Below, piece after piece: positions 28,098-41,537 of a DNA stretch of 64,000 nucleotides; within the stretch, counting starts at the first letter, position 1; the number at the start of each line of letters is the position of its first letter. Under the pieces are notes generated by a model. That model was not told where the DNA came from and ran no database searches. It saw only the letters and a list, made by a program, of their open reading frames with translations. The stretch is from positions 1-64,000 of IMG/VR virus record IMGVR_UViG_3300044796_000657; one strand, written 5' to 3'. A program made the translations under genes and the position numbers.

Positions 28098-28197
28098 AAA
28101 CCCCCACGGGAACTTAAAATTTGCCCCGGCTATTTTTTGGGAAAACGCTATAGGAAACTTTTTAGTATTTTGGCGGTGTTTTTAGAAATAAGAAAAG

Positions 28198-28533
28198 TTA
28201 AAAATGATACTCTAAAATTTCTTTAAGAAATTCTATAACTTTTACGGAATTTGCTTTCATTTTATCATGAACTAATCTGTGGCAATTAGGACAAACAATA
28301 ATAACATTACCTTTAACATATTCGCCCCCATCTTTACCGGGGACAATTCTGTGTCTGTCGCATTTAGATAAATTCCACCCGCAAATTTGACAAGAAAATT
28401 TTTGCCATTTTTTATGAGTTTTTAGGCATTTGTTTTTATGATGAGTACTACAAATATTTTTATATTTTCCATTCCCTTTACTTGTTGCTAAGTTTTTACA
28501 ATTTTCTATTGTGCAGGTTGGTCTTGTTTTCAT
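28198..28533 (-). CDS. HNH endonuclease
   Basis: CQICG...DRHRIVP..DGG.Y..GNVIIVCPNCHRLVH; much more AT-rich than its neighbours. Confidence 0.85.
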   Translation of the reverse strand: MKTRPTCTIENCKNLATSKGNGKYKNICSTHHKNKCLKTHKKWQKFSCQICGWNLSKCDRHRIVPGKDGGEYVKGNVIIVCPNCHRLVHDKMKANSVKVIEFLKEILEYHF

Positions 28534-29030
28534 TTTTTTAAATAGCGAAACCCCTATAGGAAATTATTTTTTTCTTGGGTGTTAAACATAAAGTAGTCGT
28601 CCTTGCTGTGGGGTAGGGGGGTCACTGGTACCCTCGTCAGACCTTTTGATAAATAGTTAATTAGATGATTAGAATGCCACAACATATGCCTATACATGGT
28701 GTGTATGGTCACAACCCCCAGGCGTCGCTCGCACGCTCGCTTGACTGTCAGTGCGTGGTGGCGTGACCATACAGCATGTGTGTAAACCCTATGCGATACG
28801 CTGGCATGGGGCGGGTGTGAAATGGCAATGACAGTCGTTTGAATATCTTAGCCCTGCTTGTGACCATACATCCTTTGTCCTTATCCGTTAATGTTACCAA
28901 GACTTCATTGCTCGTGACCATACAACCTATGCCCCCCACTTCGCCGAGGTCGTGCGTCTTAGTAGTAGTGACCATACAATCATTGCTCTCGCTTTGATTG
29001 AGAGCAATGATTGTGACCATACACTAGATG

Positions 29031-29789
29031 TTAACCTACATTGCGTAAGTAGTTCCGCAACGTATCTACCTCGTCATAGTCCCCGCTTCCGTTATCATCA
29101 ATCCGTTGTAGAGCCGCAACGGTTAGGCGGCGCAGTTCGTCATAGTCCCGCTTTCGCTGTACGATTGCGTTTGCGGGGCGATCAGGGGCGGCGTGGGGTG
29201 TTTTACCCTTCGGCCCCCAAGCGGCCACCAGTTGCGGATAAGACGTAAAGGGCGTGGGATCTTTATCATCATCGTCAGTCCAAAAGAATGTGCGGCTCTT
29301 CCCCTCGCCCTTGGAACACTGGTCGGAAGGGCAACATACGAACCCCTTCCCCTTATTCCCGTTGCCTTTGGCCTTGACCGTGAACGGAACTAGATCGGCC
29401 CCTTCGCAGTTCGGGCAGAGTCGGCAATAGTTGACTTGGTTCGCCAACTTGCGTAGCATCGCCGTTAGGCGTTCTTCCCACCCCTTGACCCGTGTTACCC
29501 AGCGCTGCGACTTCCCCCCGTGGAAAGTCAAGATAGGCGGTTCCCCCGGCTTCGGGTTCGGCGTGATACTGACAATGCGGCCCCGTATGGAATCCTCACC
29601 GCAACCCTTGCTAGTATCGGCCCCGTCAACCGACGAACGGACTAGGATACCGTAGGGGATGGACGGGAACGGGCGAACTAGGTAAGTATGTTCGCCGAGA
29701 TTGAACCCGGCGTAAGTCCAAAGCGGTTGACCCTTCGGCGCTGGCAGAGCATCCTCAAACTCTTGTTTGGTAAAGTAATCAATAGGCAT
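29031..29789 (-). CDS. Protein with C-terminal GRF-type zinc finger
   Basis: CPNC...NKGKGFVCC...C...FFWTD; likely start MPIDYF. Confidence 0.7.
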   Translation of the reverse strand: MPIDYFTKQEFEDALPAPKGQPLWTYAGFNLGEHTYLVRPFPSIPYGILVRSSVDGADTSKGCGEDSIRGRIVSITPNPKPGEPPILTFHGGKSQRWVTRVKGWEERLTAMLRKLANQVNYCRLCPNCEGADLVPFTVKAKGNGNKGKGFVCCPSDQCSKGEGKSRTFFWTDDDDKDPTPFTSYPQLVAAWGPKGKTPHAAPDRPANAIVQRKRDYDELRRLTVAALQRIDDNGSGDYDEVDTLRNYLRNVG

Positions 29790-29880
29790 TGGATTTCCCC
29801 TAGTGACCATACATGGAATGTTAACTTGATTTTTTGTAGCTGCGATTAGGCCGAGGTCGTGACCATACAGTAGGTACTGC

Positions 29881-29912
29881 CCTAAGCCCCCCGGATAACC
29901 GGGGGGCTTAGG
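29881..29912. terminator. Perfect 14-bp hairpin downstream of the helicase
   Basis: CCTAAGCCCCCCGG-ATAA-CCGGGGGGCTTAGG. Confidence 0.75.
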
Positions 29913-29920: not shown

Positions 29921-31951
29921 TTATTCGTCGGCGAACATCTCACGGGGGGCGTTTTCCATGTCGCTCCCTGCGATGCGGTTGACCGTGAGCAAGAGCCGTT
30001 TACCCCGGCTTAGGGCAACGTGTCGGCAAGCGGCATCCTCCTCCGAGTCGCCCCAGCTTTCGTTGAACTTGGCGCTATCGTCCACGATTGCTACGTCTGC
30101 TTCGTCGCCCTTACAGCGATACACCGTAGTAAGAACACGGCGGGCCTTACGATCAGCGTAGTAGGCGATAAAGCGGCGCAAGTTGCCTACCGTGGCGATT
30201 GCTTCTAGGCCCGCTTTAACCAGCAACGTAGGATCGTCCTGAATTGCTTTTCCGAGTTCCAGAACAAAGCGCTCCATAGAATTCGGATCGGGTGCGCCCG
30301 TTTCCGCTGCTTCCGTTTCCGCTGCCATCTCTTCCAATTTTTTCAGGCATACGGCAAGGGTCGTGGGATATTCACCAGCGGTATCAGGCCACCCGGCGCC
30401 GTTGTAGATAAACCCGTCAATAATCCCCATGAAGCCATCGTTGCCACGGATACAACATTCTTGTTGTGATTTGAGCGTATCAATGAGCAGTTTGGATAGT
30501 GGGGCGTTCGTGCGAGTGATCCATAGTGCCGTTTCGCCGGGGGGGAGGTTGATCCAAGCGGTGAACGCTTGCGATTGATCCACGATCCACGCTTCCGACT
30601 TTCCAGCGGGAAGGGCCGATTGTATAACCGTATTGAGCGGACGATAGGCGGCGCAGATTTCCGGGCCGTGGCGGAAAGTTTTTGTTAGTTGCGCCCTCAC
30701 TGCTGCTTCACCCGTCAATTCTTCCCAGAGTCGCCCGATAAGGTTGAAGGAACCGCCAAAAGCGCCCCGCCAACCGTAGATAGCTTGACCCGCCTTATAT
30801 CCATCGTCGCCCGGTTGACCGCTGGCATCATCCCCGATAACGGCCAGCTCGCCGTTGCGGAACACCTGCGCCAGTATGACGGCGATTTGACATAGGGAAA
30901 GGTCTTGCCCTTCGTCAACGATAGCGCCCGGCAGTTGCGGAAGTTGTATCGTCCGTATGAGACTTGCGAAGTGGCGAACGTCATCATTCGTCCATTCGCT
31001 TGCTCGTTTGGATACGCAATCGAACCGCATTTTCCAACCAGTTCGGGAAATGGCATCGGCGACCGGGCGGGAGATTTGTTCGGCTAAGTCTACTTTCTTG
31101 CTAGTCTTATGCGAACGGCAGAGCATAGCGGGGAGATAGTCCCGAATGAGATCCATAGCGCCGTGAGTTTGTTCCGCTTTCCGTGCTAGACTTCCGAACC
31201 GTGTGAAAATGGCATTCACGCTATCGGCGAAAAAATTGGTATCGGTTTCGTCGGTCGTGAAGAGGCAAACGTCCCGCATACGTTCAACGATTTTTCCGAC
31301 GATACCCAACCGGGGGCGCTCGCCCTTTTCGAAGTTCGGTTCGGTCAATTCCTTCCAGAGATCATTGAGCTTTTTCGTATCATAGTTGCGACGGGTGAAG
31401 CCCTGCGCCCGCCCGTGCCACGAGTTGAGCGTAGCAACGTCGGGAAATTCAATCGGCAGTTTTTCCAAGGCGACGTTTGCGGCGTTTTTATTGAACGTGA
31501 GGAGCGGATACTTGAAGAGATCGCCCTTACGGCGCTTGTGGATTGATTGCGCCGACCAGCTAACCGTAGTGGTTTTAGCCGTTCCGGGTCCGGCGTCAAT
31601 GAGAAGCAAGCGGCCCCCACGTTGAGCGGGTTCTTGAGCGAATAGGGCGTTAATTTGATTCTGTTCGGCAGTGGGGCGGGCGATGATAGGCCACGTTTTA
31701 GCCCGTTCCACGACTTCGGCGGGAACGAACGTAGTGTTATTCCAGATAACCCCCTCACAACCGGACTTGATCCAGCTTTTGCCGACTTTCTTCACGCTGC
31801 CCTTAGAGCAACGGAACCCCTTACCGCTGCCCATTGGCACCATGCTTGCGCCGCAAGTAGGGCAGGAAATGATACCAGTAGCGGCACAACGGTTAGAATC
31901 AACCGTCGGCTTCTTGACCCGTGGCGTGAATGCCATAGCAGTAGTTCCCAT
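29921..31951 (-). CDS. UvrD/Rep-like SF1 helicase with N-terminal zinc ribbon
   Basis: AGPGTAKT (Walker A variant), LTFNKNAA, VDEGQD, GD...QAIYGWRGA, LTKTFR, TRTN, TVYRCKGDE, HVALSRGK; N-terminal CPTC...C...C. Confidence 0.9.
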   Translation of the reverse strand: MGTTAMAFTPRVKKPTVDSNRCAATGIISCPTCGASMVPMGSGKGFRCSKGSVKKVGKSWIKSGCEGVIWNNTTFVPAEVVERAKTWPIIARPTAEQNQINALFAQEPAQRGGRLLLIDAGPGTAKTTTVSWSAQSIHKRRKGDLFKYPLLTFNKNAANVALEKLPIEFPDVATLNSWHGRAQGFTRRNYDTKKLNDLWKELTEPNFEKGERPRLGIVGKIVERMRDVCLFTTDETDTNFFADSVNAIFTRFGSLARKAEQTHGAMDLIRDYLPAMLCRSHKTSKKVDLAEQISRPVADAISRTGWKMRFDCVSKRASEWTNDDVRHFASLIRTIQLPQLPGAIVDEGQDLSLCQIAVILAQVFRNGELAVIGDDASGQPGDDGYKAGQAIYGWRGAFGGSFNLIGRLWEELTGEAAVRAQLTKTFRHGPEICAAYRPLNTVIQSALPAGKSEAWIVDQSQAFTAWINLPPGETALWITRTNAPLSKLLIDTLKSQQECCIRGNDGFMGIIDGFIYNGAGWPDTAGEYPTTLAVCLKKLEEMAAETEAAETGAPDPNSMERFVLELGKAIQDDPTLLVKAGLEAIATVGNLRRFIAYYADRKARRVLTTVYRCKGDEADVAIVDDSAKFNESWGDSEEDAACRHVALSRGKRLLLTVNRIAGSDMENAPREMFADE

Positions 31952-32207
31952 TATATGGAACCACCTCCGTTTAGGCCGGAGTTAGCCTCAGCCCCTCTCT
32001 GTGGGCTTACCCGTATACTTGTATGGTCACAACCCCTCGGCGTCAAGTGAATTCTCAAAATTCGCCCTGCTTGTATGGTCACAATGGGGTCTGGCTATTA
32101 TCGGCCATGCTTGTATGGTCACAATTGCCTTTGAATGTTAACTGCCTTGCTTGTATGGTCACGGGTACTTAACCGCCCCCCGAAGGGGGGCGCAGTAGCG
32201 CCAGGGC

Positions 32208-32289
32208 GTGACCATACATACGCTGAAAGAAACGGGCTATCTTTGTCTTATGCCCTTGGCGAAGTCCTATTCATGGTGTGTATGGTCAC
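32208..32289. repeat. Inverted-pair element copy 1 (82 bp)
   Basis: GTGACCATACA-N5-TGAAAGAAACGG ... CTATTCA-N5-TGTATGGTCAC. Confidence 0.85.
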
Positions 32290-32400
32290 GACGGGGTGGC
32301 CCAATAAAAGCGAACCGATCCGGTTCGCCTATTGGGGTGTCTACCTATTGGCTTGTATGGTCACAGCCTCCTCATTCTGATGATCGTCCAAGTCAGATTG

Positions 32401-32631
32401 TCAGAGAGTATCACTACCGGGCATGGCCAGCGCTGGATCTTCGGGCATCACGGCATCATCGGCGATACGCACCCAATGCGTATATTTCATATCGAGGACG
32501 TTGCTGATTTCACCGATCTTGGCTTGTTCCATCCAAGTGATAATTTCACCATGTTGTGGCATCATCTTGCGGGCGTCTTCAAGTGTCAGCACTTCAGGCC
32601 ACGAATGATCGAGAACGAGGAACTTGGCCAT
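32401..32631 (-). CDS. Cassette ORFan
   Basis: AGGAG SD; lies between two sites. Confidence 0.75.
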   Translation of the reverse strand: MAKFLVLDHSWPEVLTLEDARKMMPQHGEIITWMEQAKIGEISNVLDMKYTHWVRIADDAVMPEDPALAMPGSDTL

Positions 32632-32676
32632 AATATTAACTCCTATTGGCGGGTTTACACCAATAGGGTTGTATGG

Positions 32677-32862
32677 TCACTCCAATTCCAAGAAGCATCG
32701 TCCGCCGATCACTTTGATGCTCTTGATATTGTAAGACGTTCCGGCTGGTTCGCATTGGGCGACAAGCGAAGTTTCGCCGTCAACTTCAATCTCCTCACCA
32801 GTGTCGGGGTCGTTGCCGTTCAAGAGCGATGATAGAGCGGCATGAAGTTCGTTCGGGTTCAC
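32677..32862 (-). CDS. Cassette ORFan
   Basis: GGAG SD + GTG; TGA stop is inside the site. Confidence 0.75.
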   Translation of the reverse strand: MNPNELHAALSSLLNGNDPDTGEEIEVDGETSLVAQCEPAGTSYNIKSIKVIGGRCFLELE

Positions 32863-32974
32863 GGCATAATCTCCAGAGCTTGGGTTTACACCAATAGGAC
32901 TGTATGGTCACTCACTGCCGTCTGCACTGGCAATCGTTGTGGGCTTGCACACGATCTATGCATGGTGCTGCACA

Positions 32975-33298
32975 CTAGCTTGGGCTATTCGCCTCGGATT
33001 GAATGACGAGAACGGCGACCCAATTACCCCGCTCATTCTTGGCGTATTGAACTTTGTTGAGGATGCCTTTATTGGCTTCCAAGCGGCGTAGGGCTTCCGT
33101 TCTCATTGCCCGGTAGCTGCCCACCATTTCAGGATAAACGGCGTTTGCGGTCGGCCAGTCCCAACCGCTGGTAATATCGCCGGGGCAATGATTCTGCTTT
33201 GCCGTGAAGGCAAGATAGGCCAGAACACGGTTAATGCCCTTGATTAATTGGGCATCCTTCATCTCACCAACGGGCTTCGGGAATTTTGGCTCTTTCAT
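32975..33298 (-). CDS. Cassette ORFan
   Basis: AAGGAG SD; 107 aa. Confidence 0.8.
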   Translation of the reverse strand: MKEPKFPKPVGEMKDAQLIKGINRVLAYLAFTAKQNHCPGDITSGWDWPTANAVYPEMVGSYRAMRTEALRRLEANKGILNKVQYAKNERGNWVAVLVIQSEANSPS

Positions 33299-33335
33299 GG
33301 CTGGTCTCCTTGTACCCGTTGGGTTGTATGGTCAC

Positions 33336-33550
33336 TCAGGCTACGTCTTCATGCGGTAGGTCGTCGCTATTGACGACGATAACGAGTTGATCGCCTTCCG
33401 AACCGCCCTTGCTGTAAACGACATTGAACAAACTGAAAGTTAAGTCAGGTTCGGTGCCGTGGTGAGACATGAGCAGAGTAGCGGGGCAATCATCGCTCAA
33501 GTGTTCATGGCTTTGCGAATATCCCCGACACTGACGGTGTGGACGGCCAT
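33336..33550 (-). pseudogene. Cassette ORFan with a 1-nt frameshift
   Basis: AAGGAG SD; MAVHTVSVGDIRKAM joins EHLSDDCPATLL...EDVA* if one G is added near 33505; 215 nt; stop abuts the site. Confidence 0.6.
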
Positions 33551-33584
33551 AACATTGTCTCCTTGTACCCGTTGGGTTGTATGG

Positions 33585-33821
33585 TCACTCCCATACAAGG
33601 CTAATGCCCTTGCGAGAGAGTTTGACACGGCGACGATCTTGGCGGGAAGGCTGAGGGCCGACATTGATGCGATACAGTTGATCCAATTCGGCACAAGCGG
33701 CATCATACTTCCGAAGGGCATGGACATAAGCAACGCCTTGCAGTCCATGAAGTTTGGCGCCGCATTCTTGTTTCTTGGCTTTGAGGCGGACCTTTTCGGC
33801 CTCATATTCGCTCTTGTTCAT
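33585..33821 (-). CDS. Cassette ORFan
   Basis: TGA stop inside the site. Confidence 0.75.
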   Translation of the reverse strand: MNKSEYEAEKVRLKAKKQECGAKLHGLQGVAYVHALRKYDAACAELDQLYRINVGPQPSRQDRRRVKLSRKGISLVWE

Positions 33822-33859
33822 GTTAACTCCACCCCTTTGATACTAGGGGGATTGTATGG

Positions 33860-34294
33860 TCACCCCTTGACGAATTCACCGGGTTGAGCATCAAAGAGCT
33901 TGCGGGCTTCTTTCAGCGTCGGGAACGATTCCCAGAATACCCGTTTGCCGTTGCCGAAATCGTGCTGCCGAACGTGAAAACAAGCGTGTTCGTGCCACAA
34001 GTCCGTATCGACGCTTTCTTCTGTGCTTTTGCGTTCAATGTAGCCACAAGCGAAGGAATAGGCCGTTAGGCGTCCATCCTTGCTACGGAAGCTTGGCGAC
34101 TTGTAATTGCGGCTGATTGCGTCCAGCATTTGAGCGTAGGAGCATTGCTTGGCGTGGATCATGCCCGTCAACGCTTTGTATTCGTCGGGGAGGCAAACGC
34201 TTTCAATGTAGTTCGCCCATCCTTGCGTGATAGGCGGCATCTTTGCCTTGCATTCGGCGATAATGGCGATTGCCCTTGCTTGTGAAATTCGCAT
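33860..34294 (-). CDS. Cassette ORFan
   Basis: GGGGAG SD; TGA stop inside the site. Confidence 0.8.
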   Translation of the reverse strand: MRISQARAIAIIAECKAKMPPITQGWANYIESVCLPDEYKALTGMIHAKQCSYAQMLDAISRNYKSPSFRSKDGRLTAYSFACGYIERKSTEESVDTDLWHEHACFHVRQHDFGNGKRVFWESFPTLKEARKLFDAQPGEFVKG

Positions 34295-34333
34295 TTCAAT
34301 TTCTCCCCGTTTGGTATCCAGTGGGATGTATGG

Positions 34334-34576
34334 TCACCGCAAAGAAACGGGTGCTATTGCCAGAATGAGGTCTTCACCCTTGGCCGTAATGTTAACTTGG
34401 CTATTGCCGTCCTTTTCCACTTCTTCCAGCAACTCGGCGATATTATCAGACTTATCGCCCAGACGATACGCCAGAACCAAAGCCTTATCAATGGCTTTCT
34501 GAAACGAATTGGCGTAATGAAGCTCCTGCAGCACGGCGATCCCATCCCGGCTGATGATTGCGACGATGAACAGCAT
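34334..34576 (-). CDS. Cassette ORFan
   Basis: GAGGGG SD + ATG 34576; TGA stop inside the site. Confidence 0.75.
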   Translation of the reverse strand: MLFIVAIISRDGIAVLQELHYANSFQKAIDKALVLAYRLGDKSDNIAELLEEVEKDGNSQVNITAKGEDLILAIAPVSLR

Positions 34577-34615
34577 TTCAATCCCCTCTTGGTACCACTT
34601 GGCTTGTATGGTCAC

Positions 34616-34834
34616 CTACTTCGGGTCCGACCACTGACCCATGACGATTTTTTCCTTGCCCGTCTTGGCTTTCTTGATCGCTTCCTTGGCCGATTCGGCT
34701 TCGACCTTGGCGATCCAATACATACCGGCGCTGAGACGATCCCGATTATCGCCGTCAATGTTCTTGTGAGTGCGATAGCCCCGACTCTTGGCAGGCCAAT
34801 TACTATAACACTCAACATAATAAATTTTCGGCAT
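34616..34834 (-). CDS. Cassette ORFan
   Basis: GAGGG SD; TAG directly abuts the site. Confidence 0.8.
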   Translation of the reverse strand: MPKIYYVECYSNWPAKSRGYRTHKNIDGDNRDRLSAGMYWIAKVEAESAKEAIKKAKTGKEKIVMGQWSDPK

Positions 34835-34897
34835 GACGAACCCTCTTAGTTAACATCACCGGTGTATGGTCACATTAAACATTAACATCCTGCCACC

Positions 34898-34980
34898 GTG
34901 ACCATACATGCTGTGAATAGGGCTTTGATTTACATTTGTATATCTTTATTCAAAGTCTTATTCATGGTGTGTATGGTCAC
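34898..34980. repeat. Inverted-pair element copy 2 (83 bp, near-perfect hairpin)
   Basis: 11-bp terminal inverted repeat plus TGAATAGGGCTTTGA/TCAAAGTCTTATTCA inner stem. Confidence 0.85.
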
Positions 34981-35057
34981 AGAGGGTGTTGTACGGTTAA
35001 AACGATCAATCCGGGGGCGCTTCCACCCTCGGATTGATCGCAAGGCTGCCGAATTGT

Positions 35058-35114
35058 TTAGCCTTCATAGCCGAAGTCCCGTTCGTCGTCGTAGTCGTCG
35101 GGGTCGGGCGGCAT
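35058..35114 (-). CDS. 18-aa acidic micropeptide cassette
   Basis: AAAGGAG SD; MPPDPDDYDDERDFGYEG; between a site and a hairpin. Confidence 0.45.
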   Translation of the reverse strand: MPPDPDDYDDERDFGYEG

Positions 35115-35146
35115 AGTGGTCTCCTTTCATTGTTAAGGTTGTATGG

Positions 35147-35365
35147 TCACTCCAAGAGAGCGGCCAGCAATTCCTCATCGGACAAGTTTTCTGGAACGTC
35201 GGGCGGCAGTCCAAGGCGTTCCCGCTCATCAACAATTTGCTTTTCGTACTGTTTCACCCAGACTTGACGCAATTTACGTTCGTTGTCATTCTTGGCAGAT
35301 GCTAACCGCTGGCGCTCATGACTTAGTCCAAGTTCAAGAGCGTGTAAATGGCTTAGGTCTTTCAT
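35147..35365 (-). CDS. Cassette ORFan (coiled coil)
   Basis: TGA stop inside the site. Confidence 0.75.
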   Translation of the reverse strand: MKDLSHLHALELGLSHERQRLASAKNDNERKLRQVWVKQYEKQIVDERERLGLPPDVPENLSDEELLAALLE

Positions 35366-35383
35366 ACCTATTGGCCTGTATGG

Positions 35384-35617
35384 TCACTTCTTTTTCTTCT
35401 TTTGCGTTTCCATTCGTTTGAGCATTTTGCCAAGCTGGTGAAGATCAACCGGCTTATGCATCCTCAATTCCAGTTTATCGGCGAGTTCACGGGTCGTTAA
35501 CTGCCCATGTTCAGCAGTGATTTCGACAATTAGAGTTTTTATGTGCCCCTCCAAGTCGTACCAACTACTGGACGCTTGGTTACTAATGCCTTCGTTTGGC
35601 TTGTCCGTTTCTTTCAT
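35384..35617 (-). CDS. Cassette ORFan, possible winged-helix
   Basis: HGQLTTRELADKL...QLGKMLKRM; TGA stop inside the site. Confidence 0.7.
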   Translation of the reverse strand: MKETDKPNEGISNQASSSWYDLEGHIKTLIVEITAEHGQLTTRELADKLELRMHKPVDLHQLGKMLKRMETQKKKKK

Positions 35618-35651
35618 GGCTCACCCCCTTGGTAACCATAAGGGTGTATGG

Positions 35652-35927
35652 TCACCCGAAAAGGAGGTGCGTGTGGATGATGTATTCCCGGCGGGTTTCG
35701 TCGGGAAATGTAGTATCGCTGAATTCACCGCTGACGCCGGGCAATTCACCTTCCGGCACTTGATCGCCCTTGAGGAAAGAGAAGCCAGCGTAAACGTCGG
35801 CTTCATAGAGAACACCTTCGAGAATGGAATTCCAACCGGCCCGCAGGTCAGGAGAACAATCCTTGCTCTCCCGGTTGAGCGTGTTCACCCTCTGGATCAA
35901 TCCTTTGACATGAACAGTTTGCCGCAT
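35652..35927 (-). CDS. Cassette ORFan
   Basis: GAGG SD; TGA stop inside the site. Confidence 0.8.
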   Translation of the reverse strand: MRQTVHVKGLIQRVNTLNRESKDCSPDLRAGWNSILEGVLYEADVYAGFSFLKGDQVPEGELPGVSGEFSDTTFPDETRREYIIHTHLLFG

Positions 35928-35942
35928 GGTATCGCCTCTTGG

Positions 35943-36653
35943 TTAACCATTAGCCTGTATGGTCACCTTCTTGTCGTCGTATTCTTTCATGCCTTCGTAT
36001 GTGTCAAGTTCGCTTGCGGCCCGTTCGTTCATTTTGTAGGCGTTGACTTGATCGCCGACGCACGCTAAGAGCCATTCCAAGCGGTTCACCGTGATGCCCG
36101 CAGGAACGAATTGAGGCGGGAACGTCCACGTTCCTTTGATTGCCTCGGCACACGCTTTCAGGAAGATCAAAGCGTAAAGGCTATTGTGCCAACCGTGCGT
36201 ATAAAGCCCGTAGATTTGCGCCGGGGTGTTCGCACCGTGCGCCCATTCCGGTACCGGCGTCCATCGTGTATCATGCTTGGCGGAAAGAGCTACCGATGTT
36301 TCGCCGTGGTGGTTGTAGTAGGTCGGCTTTTTGTCGCTGTATTTGAGTTTGTGGAAGCGTTGGATCGTGTCCGCCTTCGGTTCCTTCGGCCACATTTGAG
36401 AAATGACGGGGTTGCAGCCATTGGCCCGCATATGACGGGCGAGGGCGTGTAGGAATTCTTCGAGGCGTTCGCTGATAAGTAGGCCCGGCGGGGTGTGTTT
36501 CGTCGGGTAATCGCCCATACAATCGGCAAACGCCACTTGCGGGTTAACCGCTTTGTTGGTGTATCCCCAACGATTATCGGGGTGAAGGTCTGACGGGAAG
36601 ATCATAAAGATATGATCCGGGTTCACCAAACTACGGAATTCAATAACGGCCAT
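35943..36653 (-). CDS. Cassette ORFan (236 aa)
   Basis: AGGAG SD; reads through the site and stops at the TAA of GTTAAC. Confidence 0.8.
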   Translation of the reverse strand: MAVIEFRSLVNPDHIFMIFPSDLHPDNRWGYTNKAVNPQVAFADCMGDYPTKHTPPGLLISERLEEFLHALARHMRANGCNPVISQMWPKEPKADTIQRFHKLKYSDKKPTYYNHHGETSVALSAKHDTRWTPVPEWAHGANTPAQIYGLYTHGWHNSLYALIFLKACAEAIKGTWTFPPQFVPAGITVNRLEWLLACVGDQVNAYKMNERAASELDTYEGMKEYDDKKVTIQANG

Positions 36654-36771
36654 GATAAAGACTCCTAGAAGGATGTTAACAACTATCAGGCTGTATGGTC
36701 ACCGAAGATACGCCCCTCGGAACTACCGAGAAGCGTAGGGAATATGCCGGGGGAAGTGGACAAGACATGGA

Positions 36772-37056
36772 TCAAGCGGCGTGGCGTTCGTATTCGGCGG
36801 CTTTGGTCGTGTAGTGCTTACAAAGTTCACGCCAATCGGATACGGGAAACTTCCGCAGGGTCAGAGCGAGAAGAGGGGCATTCTCCTTATCGGCCCGTTG
36901 CGGGCAATTCCGCATATCAAGGGCCGCACGGGTTTCAATGTATAAGATAATGGCGTACTCTTCGTTGCCCTTGTGCTTCTTGATCGTTTGCAGCACGTTC
37001 GTCAAAACGGGCTGACAATTATCAATCAGCATCAAAACGGTTTCGAGGGGTTCCAT
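36772..37056 (-). CDS. Cassette ORFan
   Basis: AAGGA SD + ATG 37056. Confidence 0.75.
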   Translation of the reverse strand: MEPLETVLMLIDNCQPVLTNVLQTIKKHKGNEEYAIILYIETRAALDMRNCPQRADKENAPLLALTLRKFPVSDWRELCKHYTTKAAEYERHAA

Positions 37057-37107
37057 GATCGCAATCCTTTTGAGGTTGATGTTAACAACCATCGGGGTGT
37101 ATGGTCA

Positions 37108-37269
37108 CTAGGACACTTTCAAAGCCTCAATCTTTTCAATCGCCCATTCGAGACCTTGTATCGTGCCTTCATTCTTCCACTTCGCACGATTCCCCGAAAA
37201 ATTGCCAGCGTCGGCCTCTTCTTGACACTGACGCTGCAACTCTTTAAGTTCAGCAAGAATCTTTTCCAT
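37108..37269 (-). CDS. Cassette ORFan (53 aa, not in ORF track)
   Basis: MEKILAELKELQRQ...ALKVS*; the G of TAG is the first G of the site. Confidence 0.7.
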   Translation of the reverse strand: MEKILAELKELQRQCQEEADAGNFSGNRAKWKNEGTIQGLEWAIEKIEALKVS

Positions 37270-37316
37270 GATCGTTTACCCTTGTGGTTGATGTTAACAA
37301 CCATCGGGGTGTATGG

Positions 37317-37577
37317 TCACAACCACTCGCTTGCGAGGGCTTCAACAATCGGCATGTTGATGTACATTCCGTCGTCCGTTTGATAGACACCAGCTTCGCC
37401 CAACAGAACGGGGGAGCTGAACTTGGTGCCATCCTTCCGAAAAATCTGAGCGGAAGGGAAACGACTGTCTGACACTTCAACGAATGCCCGTTTGCCAGCA
37501 CAACGCATGTGCATGCACACTTCGCTGTGAGGCAATTCAACTTCGACCTTTTGGCCGGGAACTACTGGTTGCCGCAT
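37317..37577 (-). CDS. Cassette ORFan
   Basis: GGAG SD; TGA stop inside the site. Confidence 0.8.
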   Translation of the reverse strand: MRQPVVPGQKVEVELPHSEVCMHMRCAGKRAFVEVSDSRFPSAQIFRKDGTKFSSPVLLGEAGVYQTDDGMYINMPIVEALASEWL

Positions 37578-37621
37578 GATCGTTCTCCGTTTTGGAAGTT
37601 AACAACCATCGGCCTGTATGG

Positions 37622-37846
37622 TCACTTGCCAAAAACTTTCTTGTGCCGCTTGGCCTTGGCTTTGCGTGCCCGTTCCTTAGCGGTTCGCTTGCGTTTGCCT
37701 ACACCATTGGCATCGGTAGGCGTTCCCCGTTGCTTGCTGTCAAAACGGGGTGGTCGGCGGCGTTCTACTTCGGGGTGAGGCCAAACGGGCCAGCAAGCCC
37801 CGATAAGAGCGAACACGGGCAAAATGCGGGGATGTCGGGCAATCAC
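37622..37846 (-). CDS. Very basic cassette ORFan
   Basis: GAGGAG SD, GTGA overlap; TGA stop inside the site. Confidence 0.65.
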   Translation of the reverse strand: MIARHPRILPVFALIGACWPVWPHPEVERRRPPRFDSKQRGTPTDANGVGKRKRTAKERARKAKAKRHKKVFGK

Positions 37847-38217
37847 GGTAGCTCCTCTGGCTTCTTGTTACCGTAGTTGAACCAACCTTGAGCCAGAATG
37901 CGGTCGATCAACTTTTTGGCTTGGTAAATGCTGGTAATGTCGCAACCGGCGGCGCAACTCGTCACCAGTTTGCCCGTATCGCCGGACGTTCCGAACAGAT
38001 AGACGGCAGTTTCCCGCACTTTGATGCCACGCAAACCGCCCGTATAAAGTTGCGTGTTGCGGACGATCATACACCCCCGGTGCATGGTGTAAGTCTCACG
38101 CTTGCCGTGCGGCTTGCGGAAAAATACCGGTTCGGCCCGTTCAACGTCAACGATGCTATGATCTTCGTTGACGGTCAACAACCAATCGGCACCTAACATT
38201 TTGAGCGGGATCAGCAT
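37843..38217 (-). CDS. Cassette ORFan
   Basis: GAGGG SD; 124 aa. Confidence 0.8.
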   Translation of the reverse strand: MLIPLKMLGADWLLTVNEDHSIVDVERAEPVFFRKPHGKRETYTMHRGCMIVRNTQLYTGGLRGIKVRETAVYLFGTSGDTGKLVTSCAAGCDITSIYQAKKLIDRILAQGWFNYGNKKPEELP

Positions 38218-38260
38218 CGGTTTACCCTCTTAGTTAACCTTTGCGGTGTATGGTCACAAG

Positions 38261-38332
38261 CAAGCGTGAGACGGGTTAAGTGTCAACCGCTCCCCAACAA
38301 TCGGCCCTCCGATCATTGTTGTCTCACGCTTG
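38261..38332. ncRNA. Candidate structured RNA (three-way junction)
   Basis: CAAGCGTGAGAC/GTCTCACGCTTG closing stem; inner GGTT/AACC and AACAAT-CGG/CCG-ATTGTT stems. Confidence 0.35.
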
Positions 38333-38476
38333 GTACTACTACAAACCCGCCTAAGCGGGTTGTGTAGCCTCCTTATTGGATAGGATCAGTGAGGCCGATG
38401 AACAAGACGGCAAAGAGAACGAGAATTTCCATTGTAAGCCCCTCGGTGTTATACCGTGAGGCTTGTATGGTCACCA

Positions 38477-38839
38477 CTAGGCCGCTGCCTTTTCCTCCTT
38501 TTCCTTGATCGTCATGCCGTGGGCGTTGGCGAAAGCTTGGATCATGTCCCAATAGGCACCGCTGCGCCGACTGATTTGATCCTTCAAGGCGAATGCGGTG
38601 GCGGTCACCTTCTTGGTGTTGAGGCGGGGCATCTCTTCGAGGGTGATGTTCTGCGAAGGCGAGCCAATGGGCATGTATTGAAAATGTGTAGGAAAGTCCG
38701 GGGTCGGTTCGTGCTTGACGCCGGTAAGGCTCAAGATGACGGCTTTCGTGCTTTTCCAGTGCGAGATGTCAACCTTGATCGCATTGCTTTCCGCTTTGCT
38801 TTTGGCCGTGTGGATTGAGGCCAGTTTGATGAACAACAT
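38477..38839 (-). CDS. Cassette ORFan
   Basis: AAGGAG SD; TAG 2 nt before the site. Confidence 0.8.
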   Translation of the reverse strand: MLFIKLASIHTAKSKAESNAIKVDISHWKSTKAVILSLTGVKHEPTPDFPTHFQYMPIGSPSQNITLEEMPRLNTKKVTATAFALKDQISRRSGAYWDMIQAFANAHGMTIKEKEEKAAA

Positions 38840-38886
38840 GATTGCGTCTCCTTGGGATGAATGTTAACAACTATCGGGGTGTATGG

Positions 38887-39072
38887 TCACATTTTGAGAT
38901 AGCGGTAGATCGTCGTTTGACTTTTGCCCATGAGACCAGCAATCTCCTTAACGCTCAAACCTTTTTCTTTCAATGCCTTTGCGGCATGGGCGAGGTCGGC
39001 GGGCGTGCTTTTCTTGTAGGGCGTGCTTTCTGCCATTGCTTGACGCAAAGAATCTTCTTCGGCTTGTGTCAT
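38887..39072 (-). CDS. Small helix-turn-helix DNA-binding protein
   Basis: GLSVKEIAGLMGKSQTTIYRYL; TGA stop inside the site. Confidence 0.8.
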   Translation of the reverse strand: MTQAEEDSLRQAMAESTPYKKSTPADLAHAAKALKEKGLSVKEIAGLMGKSQTTIYRYLKM

Positions 39073-39123
39073 AACAATTCTCCTGTACTGCTAAAACCCC
39101 GCCTTAGCGGGGTTTAGTGGTGT

Positions 39124-39393
39124 TTATTCGCACCATGACGGCAGAAACGTTTCGATGCCCTTGGCGTTCTGCTCGGCTACCAATTCCCGCATTTCGCCGC
39201 AGGTCAAGTAGATCGTCTCCTTGACCTTCACGATATTGAATTGAGACACGCCACGACCGCCCGGAAGGTAATCGTATTCGTGAACTCGGCGAACGATGCG
39301 GTACACGCCATCGTGGAAGTTGATAAGGCTGTTAACCTTTGTGGAACTTCCCAACATTGCGGTTCCCGGCTCTTGTGCGATTGAAACGGCCAT
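39124..39393 (-). CDS. Cassette ORFan
   Basis: AGGGAG SD + ATG 39393. Confidence 0.75.
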   Translation of the reverse strand: MAVSIAQEPGTAMLGSSTKVNSLINFHDGVYRIVRRVHEYDYLPGGRGVSQFNIVKVKETIYLTCGEMRELVAEQNAKGIETFLPSWCE

Positions 39394-39416
39394 GACTTGA
39401 ACTCCCTTGGTGCCAA

Positions 39417-39803
39417 TCAACCTGTATGGTCACCAGTGTTGAACGCCATACCGACACAAACGGCCTCATAGATCAACGCTTGCATGCCGCAGGCGCTCAT
39501 TTCGCTGAAGTCCAAACTATCACGGCCACGCATCTCCAAGGGGTGGCCCCAATGCTTTTTGGCCAACTCTACAACCTTCTCCTGAATGAGACAATGCTTG
39601 ACGAACTGCCAGAGAACATTGGCAAAAACGATATGATCCCCGTTGCGCTCACGTTCGTGTAGCCATTTCTCAAACGCATTCAAGAGCTTTTCATGATTGC
39701 CGTAAAACCGATGGAGAGGCTTCCAGCAATCATAGTGCAACGTTTTGAAGATATTGAAGGCTTCGCTTGCCGTGCCTGTTCCAACAATAGCGGGGCTTTT
39801 CAT
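39417..39803 (-). CDS. Cassette ORFan
   Basis: Reads through the site (GDHTG*). Confidence 0.75.
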   Translation of the reverse strand: MKSPAIVGTGTASEAFNIFKTLHYDCWKPLHRFYGNHEKLLNAFEKWLHERERNGDHIVFANVLWQFVKHCLIQEKVVELAKKHWGHPLEMRGRDSLDFSEMSACGMQALIYEAVCVGMAFNTGDHTG

Positions 39804-39959
39804 GTTAACTCTCACAAGAACGTCAAGGATGGGATAGCCGGTCGCCTCGGATTTCCCCGGTTGGTCTCACCGTTATATCGGGGTCTCTGTCATAGCTCGC
39901 ACTATCCGGCCTTGACAACTATCAGGCTGTATGGTCACCGGCACACTACCTGCACACAT

Positions 39960-39989
39960 AAAAAAAGCCCCGCACACTGGCGGGGCTTT
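39960..39989 (-). terminator. Intrinsic terminator
   Basis: AAAGCCCCGC-ACACTG-GCGGGGCTTT with an A-run on + (U-tail on -). Confidence 0.8.
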
Positions 39990-39992
39990 CGT

Positions 39993-40205
39993 CTACTTAC
40001 GTTGTCGTAGTCTATTTATCAAAATGTCGTACGAGGGTCGTCCCTGCGACCCACAACACAAGTGAGATGTTTTGATGATACGAACGCAGGACTTGCCAAA
40101 GCCGATGATACACGAAACGAATGCGGCAATAATCAACCAATTCGTATAGAACGGGTCAGGACTCAACAGAGTTTGCGGCCACTCTGTGACAACATACTTT
40201 TTCAC
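39993..40205 (-). CDS. Cassette ORFan, membrane protein
   Basis: GAGGAG SD + GTG; one TM. Confidence 0.65.
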   Translation of the reverse strand: MKKYVVTEWPQTLLSPDPFYTNWLIIAAFVSCIIGFGKSCVRIIKTSHLCCGSQGRPSYDILINRLRQRK

Positions 40206-40268
40206 CGTTAATCTCCTCTTGGTATCCATCACCCTGTATGGTCACGTTAATAGTTAACATCGCCCCAC

Positions 40269-40354
40269 GTGACCATACATGCTTTGAAAGAAACGGGATG
40301 AAGTTGGTGATTGTTCTGGGAATTATGTTGACTATTCATAGGATGTATGGTCAC
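40269..40354. repeat. Inverted-pair element copy 3 (86 bp)
   Basis: GTGACCATACA-N5-TGAAAGAAACGG ... GACTATTCA-TAGGA-TGTATGGTCAC. Confidence 0.85.
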
Positions 40355-40435
40355 GGGGTGGGTTGTTAACGACATAAAGGCCGGGAATGCCGAAAGGCAT
40401 TCCCGGCCCTCTTTTGTACCTATCAGGCTGTATGG

Positions 40436-40825
40436 TCACCCGGCGTTGCGGAGGATGTCTTGCATCGTCCAAGGTTCATCGTCGGCGGCGGGCTTGTCGG
40501 GCCGGTTGTCGTATTGCTCTGCGATGTCAGCGCAATTGGCATCGTGGGCGAAGTCGGACGGGGCGAGGTGGCCTAGATAGTCCTCGTTCGTGGTATGGAG
40601 TTTGTTGCGGTGTTCCCATCGCAGCATTGCCGTGCGGTAGTCGGTTTCCGTCTTGCCGAAGTAGTCCCCGCTGGAGAAAGAGATTGCGAACTTGGTAGCG
40701 CCCGCTTGGTAAGTTTGGTTGTGAACCACAAACTCACCTTTGAAGTTTTTGTAAAGGACGATGCGGATCGCCATATCGTTTCCGTTCATCATCCAAGGGC
40801 CAGCCGCAAGATAGAGCCGTTTCAT
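40436..40825 (-). CDS. Cassette ORFan
   Basis: GGAG SD; TGA stop inside the site. Confidence 0.8.
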   Translation of the reverse strand: MKRLYLAAGPWMMNGNDMAIRIVLYKNFKGEFVVHNQTYQAGATKFAISFSSGDYFGKTETDYRTAMLRWEHRNKLHTTNEDYLGHLAPSDFAHDANCADIAEQYDNRPDKPAADDEPWTMQDILRNAG

Positions 40826-40920
40826 TGTCAGGTCTCCGGGGTGAAGTTCTTTACAACTATCGGGGTGTATGGTCACGCTTATGTTAAATGAAAAAACCCG
40901 GCCAGAGGCCGGGCAAACGA

Positions 40921-41262
40921 TCAAGAACCGTTCTTTGCTTCCAATGCTCGGAAGATTAGCAGAGCATCCGAAACGGGCGGGCGTTCGTAGCCACTACACA
41001 ACTCCAGAACTTCTTCCACGCTTGGCGCTTCGTCGTCGTCCATCACTTCGCTTTCATCCCAGAGCATTTCTTGAAGTTCGTGGATTTCAGCCGGGGCCAT
41101 CGTGTTTCCGGCCCGTTCACGCACCAGATCGCCCGGATTGATGAGGATGGAATTTCCGAGTTCTCCACCGTTCCACAATGCGGCGTTGATTTCATCCAAG
41201 TTGCTTGTGGCATACGATAAGATCGCAGCCAGAACAAAACGCTTGCGTTCACTCAGTTTCAT
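40921..41262 (-). CDS. Cassette ORFan
   Basis: GGGGG SD; 113 aa. Confidence 0.8.
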   Translation of the reverse strand: MKLSERKRFVLAAILSYATSNLDEINAALWNGGELGNSILINPGDLVRERAGNTMAPAEIHELQEMLWDESEVMDDDEAPSVEEVLELCSGYERPPVSDALLIFRALEAKNGS

Positions 41263-41281
41263 CGCTTGTTTCCCCCTGTTG

Positions 41282-41479
41282 TTAACCTTCGGGCTGTATG
41301 GTCACCGCTTGGCGTTTCTTCTCAAACTCTCTATCATCATCTTCAACGATGAGACGGTTGATTGTCTTATTGACGTTGCAACCACGCACGCCCATCAAAC
41401 AGACTGACCAATTTCCGCCGTGAACACTCTCACGGATGGAATAGGTTCCGTCGTTCTCTTTAACCCCTTTGTAAAGCAT
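41282..41479 (-). CDS. Cassette ORFan
   Basis: Reads through the site and stops at the TAA of GTTAAC. Confidence 0.7.
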   Translation of the reverse strand: MLYKGVKENDGTYSIRESVHGGNWSVCLMGVRGCNVNKTINRLIVEDDDREFEKKRQAVTIQPEG

Positions 41480-41537
41480 TGAAGCCCCCTTTCTAAACAT
41501 AGGGGTGTATGGTCACGATCATTGCGGTTAACGACAA

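What the first reader, a model, noticed from the sequence alone, without database searches (positions are those of the whole stretch)
28120..29036. Iteron-like cluster beside an AT-rich tract at the convergence point
Seen: one minus site (28702) and then five plus-oriented sites at 28763, 28860, 28914, 28968 and 29013 (spacings 97, 54, 54, 45) in a gene-free stretch. The last spacer is a perfect 12-bp hairpin (ATCATTGCTCTC/GAGAGCAATGAT). The cluster lies next to the most AT-rich DNA in the window, where the + and - gene arms meet, and just downstream of the GRF and helicase genes. Inference: a replication origin (iterons plus unwinding element), a centromere-like site, or a stack of empty cassettes.
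Basis: partly seen in the sequence, partly recalled or inferred. Interest (0 to 1): 0.6.

Follow-up and report, generated by a model that had tools for sequence, protein, structure and literature searches.

The report
Reversed promoter-core array, not an origin
The supposed iterons are six of 104 identical copies of an 11-base signal that sits just upstream of about ninety genes of a 430-kb phage, most likely its own promoter. The cluster is a conserved stack of reversed, gene-less copies that closes the helicase operon, not a replication origin.

Summary
The six sites are real: exact copies of GTGACCATACA at the stated coordinates. They are not local iterons. The 430-kb phage record holds 104 exact copies. 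One-mismatch variants occur only at chance level. Most copies (77 of 104) sit 22-44 nt upstream of a ribosome-binding site and start codon on the same strand.

The best reading is a phage-specific promoter core. The evidence is a fixed-register downstream consensus, leaderless ATGs exactly 11 nt after the core, and sites that restart genes right after intrinsic terminators. Relatives with only 55-58% identical helicases and 42-60% GC carry the same 11-mer, and more distant relatives carry lineage-specific variants.

The "AT-rich tract" is an HNH endonuclease gene, not an unwinding element. Cumulative GC skew is flat here (minimum 275 kb, maximum 65 kb). No ParA or tyrosine integrase was found.

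The five plus-strand copies are bare cores. They lack the initiation-region consensus and point against the minus-strand arm. They run in the same direction as a conserved sigma70-type promoter at 28646-28675. The same reversed stack follows the helicase and GRF-zinc-finger genes in three relatives. It is therefore a conserved transcription-control array. Its exact job (barrier, antisense start zone or factor sink) is inferred, not shown.

The parts
28141..28163 (.). Left copy of a 23-nt direct repeat that brackets the HNH gene (partner at 28547-28569)
   Evidence: family D11, 83% identity. A similar sequence follows the syntenic HNH gene in L038.
28198..28533 (-). HNH endonuclease ORF (111 aa, GC 0.29).
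   Evidence: Pfam PF01844 1.4e-7 and several PHROG HNH families. GC. A syntenic AT-rich HNH gene lies in L038 at 13199-13804.
28547..28569 (.). Right copy of the direct repeat, just upstream of the HNH start
   Evidence: family D11
28641..28690 (+). Conserved sigma70-type promoter pointing right: -35 TTGATA at 28646-28651, 18-nt spacer, -10 TAGAAT at 28670-28675
   Evidence: Consensus scan, 10 of 12. The block, spacer included, is kept in L038 and in L041 (60% GC). Function is inferred.
28702..28712 (-). Copy of the 11-mer pointing left towards the HNH gene, face to face with the sigma70-type promoter
   Evidence: Homologous forward site in L038 at 13032.
28763..29023 (+). Five reversed bare cores of the 11-mer (28763, 28860, 28914, 28968, 29013) with unique spacers of 86, 43, 43 and 34 nt
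   Evidence: Scores of the 16 nt downstream are -3.6 to -18.3, against +8.4 on average for gene-associated sites and -11.7 for random sequence. Reversed stacks sit at the same place in L038, L041 and L046. Spacers are unique in the genome.
28976..29014 (.). Perfect 15-bp hairpin with 9-nt loop between the last two cores; no T-run on either strand
   Evidence: I5; sequence read
29031..29789 (-). Gene for a 252-aa protein: conserved N-terminal domain plus GRF-type zinc ribbon
   Evidence: Alignment with homologs in L038, L041 and L046 shows the CxxC...GRxF..C...C..FxW pattern. All Atlas structural neighbours carry Zn_ribbon_GRF or Zn_ribbon_Top1, at low TM. No Pfam hit passes threshold. The AF2 model is poor.
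29803..29869 (+). Two more reversed bare cores (29803, 29859) between the helicase and the GRF gene
   Evidence: scores -17.7 and -13.0. Counterparts in L038 at 12065 and 12111.
29881..29912 (.). 14-bp G+C-rich hairpin just after the helicase stop codon
   Evidence: (I8)
29921..31951 (-). UvrD-type helicase with N-terminal zinc ribbon
   Evidence: PF00580, PF13245, phrog_1967 1e-31. Homologs at 36-66% identity.
32020..32162 (-). Four tandem forward cores upstream of the helicase (spacings 52, 40, 40); three of them are bare
   Evidence: Tandem forward stacks also lie upstream of the helicase in L038 (9654-9903) and L046 (89, 129).
32208..32289 (.). Convergent-pair module: forward and reversed core 71 nt apart, foldable as a hairpin. 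Further modules at 34898-34980, 40269-40354 and 45898-45983.
   Evidence: z = -3.7 to -6.7. Three of the four follow an intrinsic terminator. The same modules occur in L038 and L041.
32354..63968 (-). Array of gene-associated copies of the 11-mer in the window, each followed by CCC, then Y/R at the 11th/12th nt, then SD and ATG. The array continues to about 172 kb in the full record.

Best explanation
GTGACCATACA is the recognition core of a phage-specific promoter of a roughly 430-kb phage. It lies at about -22 to -12, and transcription most likely starts at the 12th nucleotide after it. About ninety genes, mostly small early or DNA-metabolism genes on the minus strand between 29 and 172 kb, each carry one copy. 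The finding's cluster is a different use of the same element: five bare cores without the initiation region, turned against the minus-strand arm. They sit directly after the last gene of the helicase and GRF-zinc-finger operon and run in the same direction as a conserved host-type (sigma70) promoter at 28646-28675. The proposed mechanism is as follows. Whatever protein reads the 11-mer (an RNA polymerase holoenzyme form or an accessory factor) is loaded here in the reverse direction. There it either blocks or collides with transcription leaving the arm, or it starts weak antisense transcription over the GRF and helicase genes. Either way it closes the operon and insulates the HNH gene and the converging plus arm. 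Shown: the copy number, invariance, position and orientation of the sites; their conservation and synteny in relatives; the lack of initiation-region features in the cluster copies. Inferred: promoter function, the start point, and the barrier or antisense role.
For: (1) There are 104 exact copies in 430 kb (17 on +, 87 on -). One- and two-mismatch variants occur at shuffle level (7 against 5-10), so the 11-mer is effectively invariant. (2) Sites point the same way as the next gene. An SD plus start codon follows at +22 to +44, and the upstream gene's stop codon often abuts the motif. (3) A fixed-register consensus follows the core: CCC at 1-3 nt, then pyrimidine/purine at the 11th/12th nt in 82%/87% of sites in this genome, 74%/93% in L038 and 69%/88% in L041. 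(4) All six ATGs lying exactly 11 nt after the core open ORFs of at least 50 aa; five of the six have no SD upstream, and 67753 has a GGAG that may be coincidental. The relative L045 has five such ATGs among 22 sites, two of them at called gene starts. This fits leaderless mRNAs that start there. (5) Strong minus-strand intrinsic terminators inside the array are each followed within about 20 nt by a core, with no sigma70-like promoter, so the core must restart transcription. (6) The same 11-mer precedes nearly every small gene in contigs whose helicase is only 55-58% identical, at GC 42% (L038: 35 exact copies in 14 kb) and GC 60% (L041: 20 exact copies plus variants). L046 uses GTGATCATACA and L045 uses ATCCATACAGA. 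Relatives at 48% identity or less have none. That is the pattern expected when a recognition protein and its site evolve together. (7) For the cluster itself, the downstream scores are random-like. Reversed stacks follow the GRF-gene homolog in L038 (3 sites), L041 (2) and L046 (3), each followed by one forward site. The sigma70-type promoter running the same way is conserved in three genomes. (8) The record encodes two sigma70-family proteins.
Against: No transcript data could be obtained. No phage RNA polymerase is detectable: no PF00940, PF00562 or PF00623 match and no DFDGD motif. An 11-bp contiguous element at -22 to -12 fits no known sigma70-family, sigma54 or T7-type promoter geometry. 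The invariance is stricter than in most promoter sets. The bare cores show that the 11-mer is also used without the initiation features, which a pure promoter model does not predict. The role of the cluster rests on anatomy and synteny alone. L045 has the GRF gene but no reversed stack.
Confidence: 0.5

Rival explanations
1. Stoperator-like operator set. The asymmetric 11-mer binds a phage DNA-binding protein as a monomer, and that protein blocks elongating RNA polymerase in one direction. The five plus-strand copies would stop the rightward transcript of the conserved sigma70-type promoter before it runs antisense into the GRF and helicase genes.
For: The anatomy matches mycobacteriophage L5-type stoperators: more than twenty asymmetric 13-mers in short intergenic spaces, oriented with transcription, and inactive when reversed (PMC9283540, read). 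The cluster copies run the same way as the promoter at 28646-28675. Bare cores need only binding. IMG/VR labels the record 'provirus'.
Against: This model does not predict the fixed register to start codons, the Y/R position or the leaderless ATGs. Genes after strong terminators would be left without a promoter. No tyrosine integrase was found, and no repressor candidate was identified. There are far more sites per gene than in L5.
Confidence: 0.2
2. RNA-level signal. The 11-mer acts in polycistronic mRNA as a processing or translation-control site. The cluster, transcribed from the sigma70-type promoter, would give an RNA with five sense copies that acts as a decoy for the RNA-binding factor. 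Read from the minus arm instead, it would give antisense copies that pair with the leaders.
For: The position in 5' leaders is orientation-bound. The CCC after the core can pair with the GGG of the SD in many leaders. Forward and reversed pairs fold into stable hairpins.
Against: Covariation between the leader's 5' end and the SD region is marginal (p about 0.05). Sites directly after terminators argue for initiation. Leaderless ATGs 11 nt after the core would put the motif outside the mRNA. No processing enzyme was identified.
Confidence: 0.1
3. By-product of recombination. Unequal or illegitimate exchange between the many identical cores deleted the genes between them and left functionless 'empty cassettes'.
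For: Gene families shared with relatives sit in a different order, as expected if the cores mediate shuffling. L038 has an exact 46-bp tandem duplication of a core plus spacer. This resembles PeSL-mediated shuffling in T4-type phages (PMC2839356, PMC4122927).
Against: The reversed orientation, the position after the GRF gene and the following forward site are kept in four genomes that are about 45% diverged at protein level. The spacers are not significantly similar to gene leaders.
Confidence: 0.1
4. Replication origin. Either iterons bound by the neighbouring helicase and GRF proteins, or a transcription-primed origin of the T7 or T4 type (promoters plus a nearby easily melted stretch).
For: The repeats lie next to a helicase gene and a gene for a zinc ribbon of an ssDNA-binding type. 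Divergent promoter-like elements flank a conserved 45-bp AT-rich block. From my own knowledge, T7's primary origin is two phage promoters followed by an AT-rich region.
Against: The repeat is dispersed genome-wide upstream of genes. The large AT-rich tract is a coding HNH gene. Cumulative GC skew is flat across 0-43 kb, with minimum at 275.5 kb and maximum at 64.8 kb. Gene arms converge here rather than diverge. The small AT-rich block reads as a sigma70 promoter.
Confidence: 0.08
5. Centromere-like partition site bound by the ParB-HTH protein encoded at 41585-43012.
For: A ParB-HTH protein is encoded in the array and has three tandem cores upstream of its gene.
Against: No ParA-type ATPase is detectable. 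The site is asymmetric, unlike parS. There are 104 dispersed copies tied to gene starts.
Confidence: 0.02

Closest known systems
Phage-specific promoters repeated through a genome (T7/SP6-type RNA polymerase promoters; T4 late and middle promoters; phiKZ-type early promoters). Compared from my own knowledge.
   Same: A short, highly conserved sequence at a fixed distance upstream of many co-oriented genes. Versions are lineage-specific in relatives. Some copies sit in tandem with host-type promoters (three cases here).
   Different: No cognate phage RNA polymerase was found. The element is an invariant 11-mer at about -22 to -12 with no -35/-10 or -24/-12 pattern. Bare copies are stacked in reverse at an operon end.
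Stoperators of Cluster A mycobacteriophages (L5 gp71 type; PMC9283540, PMC6550527)
   Same: Asymmetric sites of 11-13 bp, in many copies, in short intergenic spaces, with orientation tied to the direction of transcription.
   Different: The register to start codons and to the putative start point is fixed. There are about four times more sites. The sites are invariant rather than degenerate. No repressor or integrase was identified, and sites follow terminators where a promoter is needed.
PeSL promoter-terminator cassettes of T4-type phages (PMC2839356, PMC4122927)
   Same: A repeated regulatory unit flanks small ORFs of unknown function in a variable region. Shared genes appear in a different order in relatives. 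Some units combine a terminator hairpin and the promoter element.
   Different: PeSLs are sigma70 early promoters plus a stem-loop. Here the core is not sigma70-like, most units have no stem-loop, and the conserved part is shorter and invariant.
Clustered polar terminator sites behind a transcription unit (Sal-box/TTF-I repeats behind rRNA genes; mTERF sites). Compared from my own knowledge; analogy only.
   Same: Several oriented copies of one protein-binding site stacked at the 3' end of a transcription unit. The same site type is also used next to promoters.
   Different: Those are eukaryotic or organellar systems. No binding protein is known here, and no termination has been shown.
Iteron-type origins of plasmids and phages (lambda ori, P1 oriR, RK2 oriV). 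Compared from my own knowledge.
   Same: Several direct repeats with spacings of about 45-55 bp near replication genes and AT-rich DNA.
   Different: The repeats are not confined to one locus. The AT-rich DNA is a gene. There is no skew switch. The repeats point against a converging operon.

Membership tests
Iteron-type replication origin | Repeats concentrated at one locus and bound by the replicon's initiator | tested here: not met
   104 exact copies spread over 29-172 kb and beyond, 77 of them directly upstream of genes. Binding is not testable here.
Iteron-type replication origin | Adjacent non-coding AT-rich unwinding element | tested here: not met
   The AT-rich tract 28177-28576 is the HNH ORF 28198-28533. 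The remaining 45-bp AT-rich block reads as a sigma70-type promoter.
Iteron-type replication origin | Strand-composition switch (cumulative GC skew extreme) at the site | tested here: not met
   Skew is flat from 0 to 43 kb, with minimum at 275,549 and maximum at 64,827. Caveat: the record may be part of a 614-kb contig.
Iteron-type replication origin | Autonomous replication, or a coverage peak, at the fragment | not testable with these tools
No read data were available.
ParABS centromere | parS-type sites next to a parA-parB operon | tested here: not met
   No PF13614 or PF01656 ATPase in the record. The ParB-HTH gene lies 12.5 kb away. The site is asymmetric.
Integron-like cassette array | attC-type imperfect inverted repeat 3' of each ORF, plus a tyrosine recombinase | tested here: not met
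   The element is an asymmetric 11-mer 5' of each ORF, in fixed register with the start. There is no PF00589 match.
Phage-specific promoter set | Conserved element co-oriented with, and at a fixed distance upstream of, many genes | tested here: met
Phage-specific promoter set | Transcripts start at a fixed point after the element | tested here: inconclusive
   The evidence is indirect only: Y/R at the 11th/12th nt in three genomes, leaderless ATGs at +11, and restart after terminators. There are no transcript data.
Phage-specific promoter set | Cognate polymerase or sigma factor encoded by the phage | tested here: inconclusive
   Two sigma70-family genes are present, but the promoter geometry does not fit them. 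No phage RNA polymerase was found.
Phage-specific promoter set | Kept in relatives, with lineage-specific variants | tested here: met
   Same 11-mer in L038, L041, L061 and L064; variants in L046 and L045; absent from more distant relatives.
Stoperator/operator set of a phage repressor | Asymmetric sites in short intergenic spaces, oriented with transcription | tested here: met
   Definition taken from PMC9283540.
Stoperator/operator set of a phage repressor | Temperate phage with a cognate immunity repressor | tested here: inconclusive
   There is only an automatic 'provirus' label. No tyrosine integrase was found. Serine integrases and repressors were not searched.
PeSL cassettes | Sigma70 early promoter fused to a terminator stem-loop, flanking variable ORFs | tested here: not met
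   The core has no -35/-10 pattern, and stem-loops occur at only some sites. Shuffled gene order is seen.

The most novel reading that the evidence does not exclude
The invariant 11-mer is read by a phage transcription factor or polymerase of a kind not yet described, since nothing recognisable is encoded and the -22 to -12 geometry fits no known class. Stacks of bare, oriented copies would then act as protein-based, direction-dependent terminators or insulators around the helicase-GRF operon and at operon borders. That would be a sequence-specific termination and insulation system in a bacteriophage, built from the same site that serves as its promoter.
Probability: 0.15. Interest if true: 0.8.

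Novelty: new variant of a known kind. Interest (0 to 1): 0.5.

Why it matters
Huge phages are known almost only from metagenomes, and how they run their gene expression is largely unknown. This finding gives a complete, testable regulatory vocabulary for one clade. It has one invariant 11-bp word before about ninety genes, a probable start point, lineage-specific variants, and two further conserved arrangements: reversed bare-core stacks and convergent pairs after terminators. The word can serve as a handle to fish out the protein that reads it, to define the regulon, and to recognise related phage fragments in metagenomes. It also shows that an iteron-like picture in one window can be the local face of a genome-wide signal. 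Origin calls made from repeats plus AT-rich DNA therefore need a whole-genome check.

Tried and rejected

Close relatives in public phage collections: none. There was no match in INPHARED by DNA or protein. IMG/VR held no relatives of the helicase or the DnaE-type polymerase.

IMG/VR pattern scans found only unrelated contigs with one or a few copies.

The metagenome pattern scan gave 89 contigs. Most are short-period tandem repeats that share the 11-mer, by chance or for an unresolved reason. Only L061, L064 and perhaps L091 are array-type relatives.

Spacers as decayed leaders: not significant for the cluster's own spacers (p 0.06-0.77). Spacers elsewhere in the genome: none.

SD-sequestering hairpin as the reason for the CCC: covariation is marginal (p 0.047).

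A second regulatory word (GTTAAC-type k-mers): these lie mostly inside genes, so it was rejected.

Rfam: only two tRNAs in the window.

Phage RNA polymerase: no Pfam match, no DFDGD motif, and no PDB relatives for the large unknown proteins.

Structure of the GRF protein: the AF2 model is too poor (pLDDT 58) to search with. Conserved small proteins of the array have no Pfam family. The motif itself appears in the literature only inside PCR primers.
Full report
**Observation.** The region was read directly. The hairpin in the last spacer is real and is 15 bp long once the flanking motif bases are counted. The most AT-rich DNA of the window is indeed next door, at 28177-28576 with GC 0.28. The plus-strand and minus-strand gene arms do meet here.

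Two points change the picture. First, the AT-rich tract is a gene: ORF 28198-28533 on the minus strand is an HNH endonuclease (Pfam PF01844, 1.4e-7). Second, the 11-mer is not local. The window holds 68 exact copies where about one is expected.

**The genome.** The window is the first 64 kb of a 430,229-bp IMG/VR virus record. The record encodes a DnaE-type polymerase, a class I tRNA synthetase, an NAD synthase, tRNAs and two sigma70-family proteins. It is therefore a huge phage.

The record holds 104 exact copies of the 11-mer, 87 on the minus strand, almost all between 28.7 and 172 kb. One- and two-mismatch variants occur only as often as in shuffled sequence. It is by far the most over-represented word of the genome.

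**What a typical site looks like.** For 77 sites the pattern is the same:
- the stop codon of the upstream gene;
- the 11-mer;
- CCC;
- a semi-conserved stretch in fixed register, with a pyrimidine at the 11th and a purine at the 12th nucleotide after the core;
- a Shine-Dalgarno sequence;
- a start codon 22-44 nt after the core.

Nothing upstream of the core is conserved.

Six sites have an ATG exactly 11 nt after the core. All six open ORFs of at least 50 aa. Five of the six have no Shine-Dalgarno sequence; 67753 has a GGAG upstream that may be coincidental. ATGs at neighbouring offsets mostly do not open ORFs.

Strong intrinsic terminators inside the array (for example 43271-43252, 41564-41538, 40914-40896 and 39990-39963) are each followed within about 20 nt by a core. 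No sigma70-like promoter lies there. Three sites sit in tandem with canonical sigma70 promoters.

Together these points make a promoter whose transcripts start about 12 nt after the core the best reading. It remains an inference, because no transcript data could be had.

**Relatives.** Public phage collections hold no close relative. A search of the large protein collection with the helicase found homologs at 36-66% identity, and their contigs were fetched.
- L038 (helicase 58% identical, GC 42%) carries 35 exact copies of the same 11-mer in 14 kb.
- L041 (helicase 55% identical, GC 60%) carries 20 exact copies plus close variants. In both contigs the copies again lie before nearly every small gene.
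- L046 uses GTGATCATACA.
- L045 uses ATCCATACAGA with a further upstream box. Five of its 22 sites have an ATG at +11, two of them at called gene starts.
- Contigs with helicases at 48% identity or less have no such word.
- The pyrimidine/purine step at the 11th/12th nucleotide is kept in L038 and L041 although the bases between differ.

A site that stays fixed across this much divergence, and shifts by lineage further out, is what a recognition protein and its target are expected to show. Gene families shared among these genomes sit in a different order. This recalls promoter-mediated cassette shuffling in T4-type phages (PMC2839356, PMC4122927).

**The cluster itself.** The five plus-strand copies differ from gene-associated sites. 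The 16 nt after them score -3.6 to -18.3 on a matrix built from gene-associated sites. Gene-associated sites average +8.4 and random sequence averages -11.7. The cluster copies have neither the CCC nor the pyrimidine/purine step.

The same holds for the two reversed copies between the helicase and the GRF gene (29803, 29859). It also holds for three of the four tandem forward copies upstream of the helicase. The helicase-GRF pair is thus framed by stacks of bare cores: forward ones upstream, reversed ones in the middle and downstream.

This layout is kept in relatives. Each of the following has a reversed stack after the GRF-gene homolog, followed by one forward site:
- L038: reversed sites at 12848, 12948 and 12996, forward site at 13032. 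It also has tandem forward sites before the helicase and two reversed sites after it.
- L041: reversed sites at 13187 and 13404, forward site at 13434.
- L046: reversed sites at 3214, 3283 and 3513, forward site at 3551. It also has tandem forward sites before the helicase.

The spacers are unique and are not significantly like gene leaders. The stack is therefore a conserved feature, not debris.

**A conserved host-type promoter.** Just left of the cluster lies a 45-bp block that is nearly identical in the window and L038 and has a 33-nt core in the GC-rich L041. On the plus strand it reads as a near-consensus sigma70 promoter: TTGATA at 28646-28651, 18 nt, TAGAAT at 28670-28675.

It points right, the same way as the five bare cores. 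It faces the minus-strand copy at 28702, which points at the HNH gene. The HNH gene is syntenic in L038.

The finding region is thus a conserved junction. It holds the operon end, a reversed stack, a pair of face-to-face promoters and the HNH gene, followed by the end of the converging plus arm.

**Origin, centromere, cassettes.** Cumulative GC skew is flat from 0 to 43 kb, with its maximum at 64.8 kb and minimum at 275.5 kb. The strand switch of genes at 270-275 kb is divergent, and the one at 28-29 kb is convergent. This argues against a primary origin here. One caveat applies: the helicase protein is on record on a 614-kb contig, so the 430-kb record may be incomplete.

No ParA-type ATPase and no tyrosine recombinase are detectable. 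These results speak against a partition site and against an integron-like array.

A transcription-primed origin of the T7 or T4 type cannot be excluded by sequence alone. It is kept as a minor rival.

**What reads the 11-mer.** This is unknown. No T7-type or multisubunit polymerase is detectable. The large unknown proteins have no relatives among solved structures. The two sigma factors are FliA/ECF-like, and a contiguous element at -22 to -12 does not fit their usual two-box promoters.

A stoperator-like reading remains a serious rival, because the anatomy matches the L5 system (PMC9283540). In that reading an asymmetric operator is bound by a monomeric protein that blocks polymerase in one direction. 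The five plus-strand copies would then stop the transcript of the conserved sigma70-type promoter. The fixed register to start codons and the need for restarts after terminators favour the promoter reading. A dual role is possible.

**Other arrangements.** Four modules recur at 32.2, 34.9, 40.3 and 45.9 kb. Each has a forward core, then a reversed core 71-75 nt on that is followed by a conserved TGAAAGAAACGG, then another forward core. Three of the four lie right after an intrinsic terminator. All fold as stable hairpins. They recur in L038 and L041. They look like operon-border elements, and their mechanism is open.

**Verdict.** The origin and centromere readings are not supported. The "empty cassettes" reading is right about the anatomy but wrong about the meaning.

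The best explanation is a conserved array of reversed, initiation-less copies of a clade-specific phage promoter core, acting in transcription control at the end of the helicase-GRF operon. My confidence is about 0.9 that the sites belong to a genome-wide gene-expression signal rather than to an origin. It is about 0.6 that the signal is a promoter, and about 0.3 for the specific barrier or antisense role of the stack.

No sequence was altered, and no genetic code other than table 11 was used.

Noticed in passing
window 27103-28097 (+), with 26519-27106: Four tandem paralogous genes of 80-84 aa (period about 250 nt, 61-76% DNA identity) end the plus arm. The preceding 195-aa ORF has a weak Xrn1-type SH3-like hit.
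   Followed up: partly
window 28141-28163 and 28547-28569: A 23-nt direct repeat with a CCTATAGG-like centre brackets the HNH gene. A similar sequence follows the syntenic HNH gene in L038. It could be promoter and terminator signals or an old insertion border.
   Followed up: partly
window 46400-46936 (-): An ORF-free stretch of about 0.5 kb lies behind the strongest sigma70-type promoter of the region (TTGACA, 17 nt, TAGTAT with TG) and ends in a T-run. It is a candidate non-coding RNA. It has no Rfam match and no counterpart in the relatives' loci.
   Followed up: partly
window 43000-53000: The compositional skew is extreme: GC skew is -0.23 to -0.29 at 43-46 kb, then +0.18 to +0.37 with AT skew down to -0.40 at 47-53 kb. 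The sign flips at the divergent core pair 46961(-)/47022(+). It was not explained.
   Followed up: no
window 29000: GC content steps sharply from 0.39 to 0.55 at the start of the minus arm. The 29-47 kb block, which has the densest cores, is 8-13 points richer in G+C than the rest of the genome.
   Followed up: no
window 53308-59169 (-): A 1953-aa ORF with internal repeats has no Pfam, PHROG or PDB relatives.
   Followed up: partly
window 41585-43012 (-), sites 43092, 43141, 43217: A ParB-HTH protein (PF17762, phrog_3264, TIGR00180) has three tandem cores upstream of its gene. A homolog opens contig L041. No ParA partner exists in the record.
   Followed up: partly
L009 1300-3400 (165-kb IMG/VR phage); L070, L086, L088, L098, L101; many short contigs: The same 11-mer, or near variants, forms short-period tandem repeats (periods of about 16-60 nt) in non-coding repeat regions of unrelated phage and metagenome contigs. 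Whether this is chance or reflects a shared DNA-binding protein family was not resolved.
   Followed up: partly
G000 82196, 97614 and window 46961 (all -): At three sites a canonical sigma70 promoter (TTGACA, 17 nt, TATAAT-like) follows the core by 13-24 nt. These are tandem host-type and phage-type promoters, as in the early/middle promoter pairs of T4.
   Followed up: no
whole record; row P0001: The window's helicase protein is on record on a 614,480-bp contig, while the IMG/VR record is 430,229 bp and labelled 'provirus'. The replicon may be larger than the record, or it may have host flanks. No tyrosine integrase was found.
   Followed up: partly
window 11566-11638 and 13191-13264 (+): tRNA-Lys(ttt) and tRNA-Arg(tct) genes lie in the plus arm.
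   Followed up: yes
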